From Oopsacas minuta (lineage: Eukaryota; Animalia; Porifera), in the NCBI GenBank assembly GCA_024704765.1, contig JAKMXF010000199.1, positions 662,448-726,447 of the forward strand: DNA of 64,000 nt, read 5' to 3'. Positions 57,593 through 64,000 of the stretch are shown in pieces; the stretch's first letter is position 1, and each line of letters opens with the position of its first letter. The translations under genes and the position numbers were made by a program. The notes beneath the pieces were generated by a model, which ran no database searches, was not told where the DNA came from, and saw only the letters and a program-made list of their open reading frames with translations.

Positions 57593-59175
57593 ATGGTCGC
57601 TGCTCTTCACAAAATTGAATTGATTAAAACTATAAGGGGGAAAGATAAAGCTACGTTCCAAGGGTTCGTGTATACATTGACAAAGTCGTCATTGGGCGTA
57701 CAACAGTGGGTATGTGAAAATCGGGGGACGTGTAAAGCTTGTATGTACACTAAAGGAGATGAAAATATCAAACCGACACAGATAAACGACATTTATTCTA
57801 GTCATATGCATGGATCTAACCCTGTACGAATCGAAATGCTTCGAGGTTATAATATAGTAAAAGAACGTTCAATAAATTCTGAAGAAAGTGCAAGGGTCTT
57901 TCTCTCACATGGTATCGAGCGAATGGGATCTTCAAGCATTGCACAACTCCCTAAATTGGAATCTGTGAAGAGATTCATCCGTATACACAAAAGCAAATCT
58001 GAAGAAAACTGTGGGAATCCTACCTGTGCTGCTGAAATAATAATTGCAGAAAAATACAAAGTGGCGGTAAAGGGGAGCCATTTTTACTTTCCGACTCTGG
58101 CTTTGGCGACGTCAATCAAATGATTACATTTGCTGGCCCAAAATTTTTCGCTCTTCTTTCAGAATCTGAAACTTGGTATGCTGATGGAACTTTCAAGGCA
58201 GTACCAGAATATTTTTTTCAGTTGTATACCATTCATGCAGAGAGAGATGGATTCTTCTACCCTCGCGTATATGCATTACTACCTGATAAATCTGGTTCTA
58301 CTTACAACAGACTTCTTTCTAAACTCCTCAAAATACAAACACAATTAGCCCCTTCCACGATAATGACCGATTTCGAAAAAGCAGCAATTAATGTATTTGA
58401 GGACAAATTTCTTGCTGTAATTTGGGGGTGCTTCTTTCATCTCTCCCAAAATGTACATAGAAAAATACAATCAGGGGGGTTAACAACAATCTATCAAGAA
58501 GATAGAGAATTCCTCCTGAAATTAAAGAGTTTCCCAGCCTTGTTTTTGTGAAAACAGAACAAGATGTGATGGACTGTTTCGATATTCAGATGGCAGATTT
58601 CCAGACTCTGCTCGAGAAGTTGCTACCTATTTTGAAGATAACTATGTTGGTAAAAGGCTTCCTAACAACAGTAGGAGGATCCCGCCCATTCCTATCAGAA
58701 TCTGGAACATGTACGAAATGGTACGTCAACAACTACCACGAACTAATAACGTAGTTGAGGTGTGGCACAATGCATTTAATTCTAGTGTTGCTTGTTCCCA
58801 CCCTAGTGTGTCAAAGCTGTTCAAATCTTTTCAACGAGAACAGTCACTACAAGAGGCCAAACTGATAAAGTGGCAGTCTGGTGATACAATAGTGCGCAGC
58901 AAAAAGTCCATTGAACAAGATGAGCGTATACAGTTACTTGTTGGAGATTATGAGAACAGGGATATAACAACATATCTTAGGGGATAGCATCAATTTTGAG
59001 TTTTTAACTATTGTATTATTCCTCACATACCTATTTCAATATTTAATTAAACCATATTTATCCTTTAGATGTATGAACATAACCTGAATAACAAGGGACA
59101 CAGAATCACCTGGGGACGAAATTCCCGGGAACGAAATTCCTGGGACGAAATTTCCGGAATTTGAAATTATCATCC
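57593..59175 (+). mobile_element. MULE transposon (FLYWCH + MULE DDE), frameshifted
   Basis: QGFVYT..WVCENRGTCKA..HMH, WYADGTFK..QLYTIH, IMTDFEKAAINVF..GCFFHLSQN and LPRTNNVVEVWHNAF. Confidence 0.9.
59112..59170. repeat. 15-bp-period subterminal array (gggacgaaattccc), 3-4 units
   Basis: ggggacgaaattccc gggaacgaaattcct gggacgaaatttccg. Confidence 0.8.
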
Positions 59176-61250: not shown

Positions 61251-62352
61251 AGGAATAGTTATATAAGTATATAAGGCCTTTCTACTATTCGAAACCATAG
61301 ATTACTTGAAGTACAGTAAATTTGGTAATCAATAATTCTTTTGCACGATAATACAAAATTATTGCATTTTGGTCTAATAGATGAATTATAGTTAGTTAAT
61401 TAACACAATCTATGTTATCCGACGAGTACCAGGTCAAAATGATGTAATTTGATTGGCTATACCCGGAATATGCTGTGAAATTTCCGCCAAATTTCAAGCT
61501 CTGTCAAATGATCAATATTACGTCGTCTACTCTAAAATTAACATCAATTGGTCCAAGGATGTACATATAGAATATCAAAAAATTGCCTTAATCAAGTTCT
61601 CAGGTTCCAGAGTTATAGTAGTGGCCATTAATGACATATTATACTAATATTCACTGATAACTTCACACTCTTTAAAGTTATGGCTTATCATTTTCCAAAC
61701 ATATGGTATATACCCCACTTTCTATGCCCTGATAATACATTTTGATATGATATCTCTGACAATTATGATGCAACCTTGAAAATGGCCAAATATGGTATCA
61801 TTGATGATTGTGCAATGATCCTTGGCACCTCACGTCAAATGTATTATCAGGGTAGGTGAAGTCGGGTATATGCCATATGGTTGCAAGATGATTGGCCCTA
61901 ACCTTAAAGCTTGCCCAGTTATGGGTGAATATTAGCAGAAATGTGTCATACATGGTCATTACTATAACTCTGGAACTAACATTATTTGATATTTTGTATG
62001 CTAACACCCATGGATCAATTGGTGTTAATTTTAGAGTAGACGACTGAATATTGATCATTTGACTGACCTTGAAACATATCGGATTTGCCACAACATATTC
62101 CCGTTTTAGCCAATCAGATGACCTCTTTTCGACCTGGGACTCGTCCGATGGCATAGCTTGTGTTGATTATTAACTAATAATAATACATTTATTCAGGCCA
62201 AAATGCTTGGATTTAACCTCTCTTTCGGGAAACTTCTTTAATATTCTAAAAATGATTAACCAATATTTGGACAAATTCAGTACTAACTAACAATTCATTT
62301 TAACTCGAGTGCCTACTGACCAAATTCTACTGTACATGTTTAGACATGGCTA

Positions 62353-62472: not shown

Positions 62473-63330
62473 CTTTATAATACGTTGTCTATGCCATTGG
62501 TTAAAAAAATTGATTTACAAAGCCCAATTGAACTCAAAATCGAGTCGTCTATGTTGGGATATCGAAAATCCTAGTACATACTAGCCTGTGAACTGGCTTA
62601 ATGTTTTGCATTGGGTTCTCTCTAGTTGTCCATCAGTGGGCAATTAGAGAAGACCTACTACACTAACTGAGCATACGTATTTCAACACAACTAAATGTAT
62701 AATTAGATATCCTGGCTATACTACGAATTTTTGAATATCCATACGATAATATACCTAAAAGAACTATATAACTATGTTTGTTGCAGTTTATGGACGTGCT
62801 TGGTGTGCACGTGTGCACACTGGTGTATGGCCATGCCATAATACAATATTCTCTTCTGGTTCTTTACTAAATATGAAATTAAACATAATAAATATGTTGC
62901 AGTGCATTAATTATCATTATTATATCATTATTATATCATTGTTGTCAACATTGTAATTTTTCATCATCCTTTGAAAAAGTATTTGAGTTGTAGCACCTAG
63001 AAATGAAAGGGAATATCAATAATTAATATAAAATAATATGACATAATTTGTGACAACATTACAATGTATGCTGGAGGAAATACTATTAAACACATAAATA
63101 CTCAAGCACAAGAAAAGATATATTTATCTTCTTGGATACTGCTTGTATTATACAATGATTTACATTCCAGAGTTCGTCATTATACTACCAATGATGCACT
63201 TTATGTACATTCTACATGGAAACATTGTGGGTCTCGAGCTCGAAGCACGGACTATATCCTTAATTCCATTGGTGACAAATGAAGATCTTCAATTCCTTAA
63301 AAGTACTCTAGATGTCCATCCGAGCTCTAA

Positions 63331-64000
63331 GTATATCCGGTTAACTTGATAAAATCAGATAACTCGTACACATTTGTTGCATTTTATAATCACCATCAGT
63401 GCCTTACGAAATTGTTTCTTAATATTCGTTCCCGTTCATCTCAAACCAAACGACAACATCTATTTCCTTTCTCACGATGGTTATCATTAAGGAATTATCC
63501 AATTCTATCTATTCTTCTCCACTTACCAGGAGATATTGAATTGAACCTTGGTCCTACCGGAAGAGAAGAGTTCAAGAAAATCCTTGGCGAGAAGAAACTG
63601 GCTGATTCAGCCATTATTAAATTCTCACCTGAAGAAATAGAGCAAAAAATCTGCATCCTGAAATCACAGAAACCTACAGAGAAAAATGCAAGACAAAAGT
63701 GGCAAAGGGTTCAGAATTGGTTTAAAGTTGTTTCATATCAAAGTGTTGAAACCCTATACCTTCGTGAAGCAAACAGACACAATGCAAAAAGAGTATTGGT
63801 GAGGAATGAAATCTACGATGTCCTAGAAGAATTTCACGTAAAAAATCACGAACATTCAGGAAGGACAATATTGTATAAGAGAGTTACTCAATATTACTTT
63901 AGAGTTACTGAAGAACTGTGTGGTATTTATGTCAAAATGTGTCCAACTTGCCATCTAAAAAGGGGAAAGAAATCCATAAAGTCTGTAGTTACCAAGCCAA
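63331..64000 (+). CDS. Open frame (runs off window): 2A-like peptide fused to a Ginger2/KRBA2-like integrase N-terminus with H2C2 zinc finger
   Basis: Frame +1 is open from 63331 to the end: ...RWLSLRNYPILSILLHLPGDIELNLGP-TGREEFKKIL...IYDVLEEFHVKNHEHSGRTILYKRVTQYYFRVTEELCGIYVKMCPTCHLKRG. There is no in-frame ATG before the 2A-like motif. The ORF track omits it because it has no stop codon. Confidence 0.75.

What the first reader, a model, noticed from the sequence alone, without database searches (positions are those of the whole stretch)
63331..64000. 2A-like ribosome-skipping motif placed exactly at the N-terminus of a Ginger2-type DNA transposase
Seen: one open frame encodes SILLHLPGDIELNLGP (GDIELNLGP at 63529-63555). 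This differs from the 2A consensus D[VI]ExNPG|P by one C>T transition (CTT Leu versus CCT Pro) and has the typical Leu-rich upstream helix. Immediately after the G|P site comes TGREEFKKIL..FSPEEIEQKICIL, which by eye aligns with the natural start of KRBA2/Ginger2 transposases, followed by an intact H..H..C..C integrase zinc finger. Established: 2A-like StopGo peptides occur in APE-type non-LTR retrotransposons and in some sponge and sea-urchin genes; I know of none described in Ginger DNA transposons. Inference: this family may translate leader-2A-transposase, with the 2A proline replacing the initiator Met. The upstream frame +2 ORF (63143-63349, hydrophobic, ATG-containing) overlaps the open frame and may be the frameshifted leader.
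Basis: partly seen in the sequence, partly recalled or inferred. Interest (0 to 1): 0.85.

Follow-up and report, generated by a model that had tools for sequence, protein, structure and literature searches.

The report
2A skipping peptide heading a DNA transposase
A dead copy of a cut-and-paste DNA transposon in a glass sponge shows that its family, and diverged relatives in other assemblies, place a virus-type 2A "ribosome-skipping" peptide exactly at the start of the transposase, a use of 2A I found described nowhere for DNA transposons.

Summary
Window 63331-63999 is one open frame that reads ...SILLHLPGDIELNLGP and then the N-terminus of an integrase-type transposase.

The window comes from Oopsacas minuta, a hexactinellid sponge. 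The feature is the 5' part of a ~4 kb Ginger2-type DNA transposon. It has 95-144 bp TIRs, TGTTG...CAACA termini and 4-bp AT-rich TSDs. The copy starts at 62779 and is cut by the contig end at 64000.

- **Motif in other copies:** Five of seven other copies at 88-95% identity read LLLL[SL]GDIELNPGP, so NLGP is a private C>T change.
- **Leader:** A 1-nt deletion near 63337 separates the upstream leader ORF (ATG 63155) from the 2A frame. Copy L018 has both in one frame.
- **Relatives:** Relatives at 26-59% identity, from four ENA assemblies, keep leader-2A-transposase in one frame. The D[IV]ExNPGP codons differ synonymously between them.
- **Start position:** Relatives without 2A start with Met one residue after the position of the 2A proline.
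- **Chance:** The motif occurs 9 times in 61 Mb against 0.03 expected.

Skipping itself, transcription and the leader's role are untested. First readers of this scan noted the same motif on other pieces of this genome. This is a new variant of a known kind; interest 0.65.

The parts
62779..62873 (+). 5' terminal inverted repeat of the element. It starts TGTTGCAG and is shorter than the ~144 bp TIR of copies L018 and L021 because of an internal deletion.
   Evidence: BLAST among copies gives the inverted terminal match. The termini were located. Contigs of public runs break to unrelated flanks exactly at 62779 (table 7).
62874..63154 (+). Element-internal 5' region upstream of the leader ATG, presumably promoter and 5' UTR. 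It is conserved among copies.
   Evidence: Alignment of 8 copies. The function is inferred.
63155..63337 (+). Leader ORF, 5' part (window frame 2). It starts at ATG 63155 with a hydrophobic N-terminus, MIYIPEFVIILPMMHFMYILHG.
   Evidence: Hydropathy of the first 20 residues was compared with background ORFs.
63337..63338 (+). Site of a 1-nt deletion: CC here against CCC in the seven other copies. It throws the leader out of frame with the 2A.
   Evidence: Alignments. Contigs with an extra C appear, table 4.
63338..63504 (+). Leader ORF, 3' part (window frame 1), up to the 2A peptide.
   Evidence: dN/dS of the leader is 0.35-0.61 in this frame.
63505..63555 (+). 2A-like peptide LSILLHLPGDIELNLGP. 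The core GDIELNLGP is at 63529-63555. The CTT Leu codon at 63547-63549 is CCT Pro in five sibling copies.
   Evidence: Substitutions in NPGP abolish activity in published scans.
63553..64000 (+). N-terminal 149 codons of the transposase, beginning with the 2A proline codon. It includes the H2C2 zinc finger (63808-63960) and is cut by the contig end before the DDE core.
   Evidence: The sibling copies continue into rve, Znf_SCAND3 and a Cys-rich C-terminus.

Best explanation
The window holds the 5' quarter of a dead copy of a Ginger2-type cut-and-paste DNA transposon of the glass sponge Oopsacas minuta.

In the family as it spread, one ORF encoded three parts. The first is a ~125-residue leader with a hydrophobic, signal- or anchor-like N-terminus. 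The second is a canonical class A 2A peptide, LLLLSGDIELNPG|P. The third is a ~690-residue transposase with H2C2 zinc finger, DDE/rve core, SCAND3-type zinc finger and a Cys-rich tail.

During translation the 2A would make the ribosome skip the Gly-Pro bond. The leader would then be released, and the transposase would be made separately with proline as its first residue.

Shown here: the anatomy, the in-frame arrangement, the placement at the natural N-terminus, and purifying selection on the motif across diverged lineages. Inferred: that skipping really occurs, and what the leader does.

The window copy cannot work, for three reasons. NPGP is mutated to NLGP, the leader is frameshifted, and the copy is cut by the contig end.
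For: **Element identity.** There are at least 8 copies at 88-95% identity. TIRs reach ~144 bp with termini TGTTG...CAACA. The TSDs are 4 bp (TATA, TCTA, TTTA) in 3 of 5 complete copies. These match the Ginger2 definition of Bao et al. 2010 (PMC2836005). Pfam finds rve, Znf_SCAND3 above its cut-off, and a weak H2C2. Mammalian KRBA2 is among the hits.

**Motif in the family.** Five of the seven other copies read LLLL[SL]GDIELNPGP. A ~77%-identical subfamily reads GDIDQNPGP.

**Leader in frame.** In L018 the ATG, leader and 2A lie in one frame with one stop. An open run of 134 codons has P ~8e-5 at this base composition.

**Diverged relatives.** In four other ENA assemblies, leader, 2A and transposase N-terminus lie in one open frame of 184-299 codons. 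P0015 runs 399 aa from the 2A through the whole DDE core. It sits in two copies that are 99.55% identical and have 298-bp TIRs.

**Selection.** The 9 motif codons carry synonymous differences at 7 positions between lineages, while the peptide stays D[IV]E[LS]NPGP. Leader dN/dS is 0.35-0.61 in frame against 0.5-1.3 off frame.

**Placement.** Relatives without 2A start with Met one residue after the 2A proline position.

**Rarity.** 9 motif hits against 0.03 expected in 61 Mb.

**Published activity.** Most predicted class A 2A peptides that were tested are active (Rao et al. 2025, PMC12338488).
Against: - No assay of skipping exists. Odon et al. 2013 found several retrotransposon 2A-like sequences with low or no activity.
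- No RNA run holds the element, and the reads laid were contigs only. The transcript start and any splicing are therefore unknown.
- Every O. minuta copy is broken, and no intact full-length 2A-plus-transposase ORF was found anywhere.
- The leader has no Pfam or ESM Atlas match and folds at pLDDT 33.
- The dN/dS alignments were made at the protein level in the proposed frame, which favours that frame somewhat.
- The O. minuta copies other than the window's have a Met 8 residues after the proline, which could serve as an alternative start. It is not conserved in sister lineages.
Confidence: 0.75

Rival explanations
1. The motif is conserved but does not drive efficient skipping. The transposase would be made mainly as a leader fusion, and the Leu-rich GD[IV]ExNPGP stretch would be kept for another reason, for example as part of a membrane-targeting or linker segment.
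For: Several 2A-like sequences of invertebrate retrotransposons showed low or no activity (Odon et al. 2013). The leader has hydrophobic stretches at its N-terminus and just before the motif.
Against: The conserved residues are exactly those that published mutational scans find indispensable for StopGo: G, D, E, N, P, G, P and the upstream Leu residues. The free x position and the I/V position vary, as in active 2As. No other role is known for this motif.
Confidence: 0.12
2. The leader-2A ORF and the transposase are expressed separately, through an internal start, an internal promoter or splicing. The leader ORF would act only as an upstream regulatory ORF, and the in-frame junction would be irrelevant.
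For: The O. minuta copies other than the window's carry a Met 8 residues after the proline. No RNA data exist. Two other 2A families in this genome end their 2A exon at donor-like GT sites.
Against: The junction is in frame in every lineage with an intact region. The downstream Met is absent from sister lineages. No stop or donor-like site separates 2A from transposase in this family. Relatives without a leader have their Met at the junction, not further down.
Confidence: 0.08
3. The motif is a chance or relic feature: a fragment picked up once from a 2A-bearing retrotransposon or gene and carried along without function.
For: An origin by capture is plausible, since 2A sits near the N-terminus of many invertebrate non-LTR ORFs.
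Against: The motif is conserved with synonymous codon changes across lineages whose surrounding leader is under 30% identical. 9 hits are observed against 0.03 expected. No donor with a similar leader was found among 1.84 billion representatives.
Confidence: 0.03

Closest known systems
2A-like sequences at the N-terminus of APE-type non-LTR retrotransposon ORFs (Odon et al. 2013, PMC3708506)
   Same: A class A motif (Leu-rich stretch plus D[VI]ExNPGP) placed near the start of a mobile-element ORF in marine invertebrates. The copies show a range of decay.
   Different: Here the element is a cut-and-paste DNA transposon with TIRs and TSDs and no reverse transcriptase. The leader is longer, with the 2A ending ~134 residues from the ATG against 40-80 in non-LTRs. 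The 2A abuts the exact natural N-terminus of the enzyme.
2A-like N-terminal signal sequences of sea urchin NLR-type genes (Roulston et al. 2016, PMC4981915)
   Same: A hydrophobic N-terminal leader plus 2A in front of a cellular-type protein. That system raises the idea of two fates, fused and targeted or released and cytosolic/nuclear.
   Different: There the 2A is itself part of a short signal sequence. Here the hydrophobic segment lies ~100 residues upstream of the 2A, and no targeting has been tested.
Ginger2/TDD DNA transposons and their domesticated derivatives KRBA2 and SCAND3 (Bao et al. 2010, PMC2836005; Llorens et al. 2012, PMC3575427)
   Same: TIR length, 4-bp AT-rich TSD, TGTNR termini, H2C2 plus DDE integrase-like transposase, SCAND3-type zinc finger, and a single ORF without RT.
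   Different: No Ginger element has been described with a leader-2A in front of the transposase. Sister lineages in glass sponges start with their own Met.
Viral 2A peptides (FMDV F2A, T2A, P2A)
   Same: The same consensus and presumably the same StopGo mechanism at Gly|Pro.
   Different: Viral 2As separate large functional polyprotein modules. Here the upstream product is a small leader of unknown function.

Membership tests
Class A 2A / StopGo peptide | C-terminal motif D(V/I)ExNPG|P | tested here: not met
   The window copy reads DIELNLGP. Published scans find NPGP intolerant to substitution. The family does meet the feature: five sibling copies read DIELNPGP, and relatives read DIESNPGP, DVESNPGP or DVELNPGP.
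Class A 2A / StopGo peptide | Leu-rich hydrophobic stretch and Gly just upstream of the motif | tested here: met
   LLLLSG in siblings, ILVLSG, LLKLSG and IILMAG in relatives, and the decayed LLHLPG in the window.
Class A 2A / StopGo peptide | In frame with an upstream and a downstream coding region | tested here: met
   L018 and loci L065-L069 carry leader, 2A and transposase N-terminus in one frame. P0015 continues through the DDE core. In the window the downstream side is in frame and the upstream side is broken by a 1-nt deletion.
Class A 2A / StopGo peptide | Measured separation of products in eukaryotic translation | not testable with these tools
   This needs a reporter assay.
Ginger2/TDD DNA transposons | Terminal inverted repeats of ~50-300 bp | tested here: met
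   144 bp in L018 and L021, 95 bp in the window, and 298 bp in the related L070.
Ginger2/TDD DNA transposons | 4-bp TSD at an AT-rich target (5 bp in TDD-4/5) | tested here: met
   TATA, TCTA and TTTA flank L017, L018 and L021. Two further complete copies show no clean TSD. The window copy has only one end.
Ginger2/TDD DNA transposons | Termini of the TGTNR...YNACA type | tested here: met
   TGTTG...CAACA in all copies with ends, including window 62779.
Ginger2/TDD DNA transposons | Transposase with N-terminal H2C2 zinc finger and DDE (rve) core; no RT or RNase H | tested here: met
   H2C2 is weak (15-22 bits). rve scores 29-33 bits on pieces and on full-length relatives, and Znf_SCAND3 30-38 bits. 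The element is a 4 kb, single-ORF unit with no other long ORF.
Ginger2/TDD DNA transposons | [quoted passage not shown] | not tested
   No alignment with Ginger1 or Gypsy integrases was made.
Ginger2/TDD DNA transposons | Phylogenetic placement with Ginger2 and its derivatives KRBA2/SCAND3 | tested here: inconclusive
   KRBA2 proteins are significant hits (P0079, E 5e-5), and the SCAND3-type finger is present. No tree with reference Ginger1, Ginger2 and Gypsy integrases was built.

The most novel reading that the evidence does not exclude
In glass sponges a leader-plus-2A cassette could be a modular N-terminal device used by several unrelated DNA-transposon families. The hydrophobic leader would act as a signal or anchor. 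A fused product with no skip would be held at membranes, and only the skipped, Pro-started transposase would reach the nucleus. That would be a built-in translational throttle on transposition. Two further 2A families in this genome place the 2A in a short first exon, and other first-reader notes report a 2A leader on a MULE-type element. I could not verify those notes.
Probability: 0.15. Interest if true: 0.85.

Novelty: new variant of a known kind. Interest (0 to 1): 0.65.

Why it matters
2A/StopGo recoding is known from RNA viruses, non-LTR retrotransposons and a few invertebrate genes. Recent surveys call it rare in cellular genomes and mention only retroelements.

A conserved 2A at the exact N-terminus of a DDE transposase extends this recoding to cut-and-paste DNA transposons, and to one of the earliest-branching animal groups.

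It also provides natural allelic series: NPGP against NLGP, NPGH, DIDQNPGP and SKTGP. It provides sister lineages that use a plain Met instead. Together these make the question "what does an N-terminal 2A do for a mobile element?" directly testable.

Tried and rejected
- **RNA evidence:** No RNA run holds the stretch. The four runs laid were contigs of one sample. They show copy variants and the element boundary, and nothing about transcripts.
- **More genomic DNA:** Distant Ginger-like loci of this genome with long open frames, such as C301:1410-2939, could not be inspected. None of them carries the canonical motif, because the pattern search found only 9 sites.
- **Origin of the 2A:** A tree of the N-terminal domain is unresolved. 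One origin is neither shown nor excluded.
- **Leader function:** No Pfam family and no ESM Atlas neighbour. The AlphaFold model has mean pLDDT 33, so no fold search was made.
- **Splice acceptor in front of the 2A:** Dropped. Siblings and relatives read straight through in frame.
- **Short in-frame ATG of copy L022 (annotated KAI6647750.1):** It comes from a private 1-nt deletion and is not ancestral.
- **MULE link for the other 2A families:** No MULE domain lies near the DVEVNPGP loci. The one near DIEINPGP is on the other strand.
- **Host of the ENA contigs:** Not identified. It is not O. minuta, because there is no near-identical DNA. It shares TIR-like repeats at 75-87% identity, and Vazella pourtalesii transcripts cluster with the lineages without 2A.

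Full report
**1. The observation**

Window 63331-63999 is open in frame 1 for 223 codons. It reads ...NYPILSILLHLPGDIELNLGP, then TGREEFKKILGEKK...FSPEEIEQKICIL, and further on an H..H..C..C stretch. GDIELNLGP lies at 63529-63555 as stated, with Leu codon CTT at 63547-63549. Pfam gives only a weak Integrase_H2C2 match, 15.4 bits against a 25.5 cut-off. The frame +2 ORF 63143-63349 with ATG at 63155 is present. The window ends where contig C199 ends, so the copy is truncated by the assembly.

**2. Organism and element**

A 100%-identical annotated protein names the source as Oopsacas minuta, a hexactinellid (glass) sponge. The assembly is 61.46 Mb in 365 contigs.

The 670 bases recur at least eight times at 88-95% identity, plus a ~77-79% subfamily. 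All-against-all BLAST of 10-kb loci defines a ~4.05 kb unit with inverted termini of up to 144 bp. The ends read TGTTGCAG...CTGCAACA. Three of five complete copies are flanked by 4-bp duplications, TATA, TCTA and TTTA.

In the window the element starts at 62779. Contigs of public runs break off into unrelated flanks exactly there.

The single long reading frame of the family runs from the 2A through the following parts:
- an H2C2 finger;
- a DDE/rve core (GQIDLIDF, HSDNGGEF, QGTVERVN);
- a SCAND3-type zinc finger (30.2 bits, above its cut-off);
- a Cys-rich tail.

Mammalian KRBA2 is among the significant hits of the window ORF. These are the features by which Bao et al. 2010 define Ginger2: 50-300 bp TIRs, 4-bp TSDs at AT-rich targets, TGTNR termini, and H2C2 plus DDE. 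Llorens et al. 2012 derive KRBA2 and SCAND3 from Ginger2. I did not build a tree with reference integrases, so the placement rests on anatomy and hits.

**3. The 2A in the family**

Five of the seven other copies read LLLL[SL]GDIELNPGP, with CCT where the window has CTT. One reads DPDP and one is decayed. The diverged subfamily reads GDIDQNPGP. The window's NLGP is therefore a private transition. Published deep mutational scans find the NPGP residues intolerant to substitution, so this copy's motif should be inactive.

**4. The leader**

The window has CC at 63337-63338 where all seven other copies have CCC. Public contigs show the extra C too (table 4). With that base present, the +2 ORF joins the 2A frame.

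Copy L018 shows this directly. From the ATG, 134 codons run to NPGP in one frame, with a single private stop. At this base composition an open run of that length has probability about 8e-5.

One copy (L022) has a private 1-nt deletion that brings a short ATG into frame. It is annotated as KAI6647750.1. This is not the ancestral state.

**5. Relatives elsewhere**

A search of 1.84 billion representative proteins with the window ORF found eight proteins that carry a 2A in front of the same N-terminal domain, at 26-59% identity in the multiple alignment. They lie on contigs of four ENA assemblies. There, leader, 2A and N-terminus form one open frame of 184-299 codons, followed by rve and Znf_SCAND3 pieces.

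A further search found P0015. It runs 399 aa from a 2A (LLKLSGDVESNPGP) through the complete DDE core. It is present in two 3.57-kb copies that are 99.55% identical and have 298-bp TIRs.

These hosts are not O. minuta. Their motifs are absent from the pattern hits, and flanking DNA has no near-identical match. They are probably other glass sponges, for two reasons: TIR-like repeats match at 75-87% identity, and Vazella pourtalesii transcripts cluster with sister lineages. This is not shown.

**6. Selection**

Across the lineages, seven of the nine motif codons differ synonymously: GGA/GGT, ATT/ATA/ATC, AAC/AAT, CCT/CCC/CCA, GGT/GGG/GGA and so on. The peptide meanwhile stays G-D-[IV]-E-[LS]-N-P-G-P. 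The rest of the leader is poorly conserved.

Leader dN/dS by Nei-Gojobori is 0.35-0.61 in the proposed frame and 0.5-1.3 in the other two. Synonymous divergence is highest in the proposed frame in all six pairs. The alignment was made in that frame, which helps it somewhat.

All leaders begin with a hydrophobic segment. Mean Kyte-Doolittle hydropathy of residues 2-21 is 1.0-2.25, against -0.17 +/- 0.79 for ATG-started ORFs of the window. One example is MLLSIVLLTFCLTSFS in L070.

**7. Placement**

Relatives without 2A (P0011, P0034, P0002, P0192) begin MSR.EF, aligned to (P)TGREEF. Their Met therefore falls one residue after the position of the 2A proline.

A tree of the N-terminal domain puts lineages with and without 2A in one clade but does not resolve them. 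One gain followed by losses, or several gains, both remain possible.

**8. Mechanism**

The best reading is a leader-2A-transposase polyprotein in which StopGo releases the leader and yields a Pro-started transposase. This is inferred from three things: a perfect class A consensus, its selection, and its position. Most predicted class A peptides that have been tested are active, but some retrotransposon 2A-likes are not.

The leader's role is unknown. A signal or anchor giving two fates, as in the sea urchin 2A-like signal sequences, is speculation. No RNA data exist. The leader has no Pfam or Atlas match and no confident fold.

**9. Novelty**

The key papers and recent surveys held in the library mention 2A only in viruses, retroelements and a few genes. 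None mentions a transposase, an integrase or a DNA transposon. Large screens of UniProt may list the annotated O. minuta protein without comment. First readers of this scan noted the same motif on other pieces of this genome.

I rate this a new variant of a known kind, with interest 0.65.

Noticed in passing
L059, L062, L063 (G000:C308:317978, C332:1186739, C332:1254635): A second repeat family (copies 86-90% identical) carries ...LFLIICGDVEVNPGP. Its open frame ends four codons after the proline, at a donor-like G|GTTAGT. The 2A therefore seems to sit in a short first exon. ORFs in the 1.5 kb downstream have no Pfam match.
   Followed up: partly
L061 (G000:C323:194122-194144, minus strand): An ATG-started 88-codon ORF contains ...VLLNFGDIEINPGP and runs 24 codons past the proline, crossing a donor-like GTAATT site 16 codons after it. 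A MULE domain lies ~2 kb away, but on the other strand.
   Followed up: partly
L070:3162-6630 and L071 (ENA ERZ25072740): A 3.57-kb Ginger2-type element with 298-bp TIRs is present in two copies that are 99.55% identical. It carries a 2A (DVESNPGP) in frame with the DDE core. It is the youngest 2A-bearing family seen, although the C-terminal part is frameshifted.
   Followed up: partly
L067 (ENA ERZ26869290): An internally deleted derivative is present three times within 9.4 kb, in both orientations. It joins leader-2A (NPGH) and a few N-terminal residues directly to the middle of the rve core.
   Followed up: no
window 61364-62206: An ~840-bp stretch matches its own reverse complement at 73% identity (a long palindrome), just upstream of the element.
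   Followed up: no
window 58174-58452: A MULE transposase domain hit (44 bits) on the plus strand, belonging to another DNA transposon.
   Followed up: no
L017:822-3114 and L018:6801-9089: Two copies of the family are each interrupted by a ~2.3 kb insertion. The one in L018 is a repeat also found next to copy L023, at 95% identity.
   Followed up: no
G000:C299:1217911-1218646, C317:155589-156328 and others: Pairs of ~140-bp inverted segments about 600 bp apart match the region just beyond the last transposase piece of the foreign element L066 at 75-87% identity. They look like MITE-type derivatives of a related Ginger2 lineage in O. minuta.
   Followed up: no
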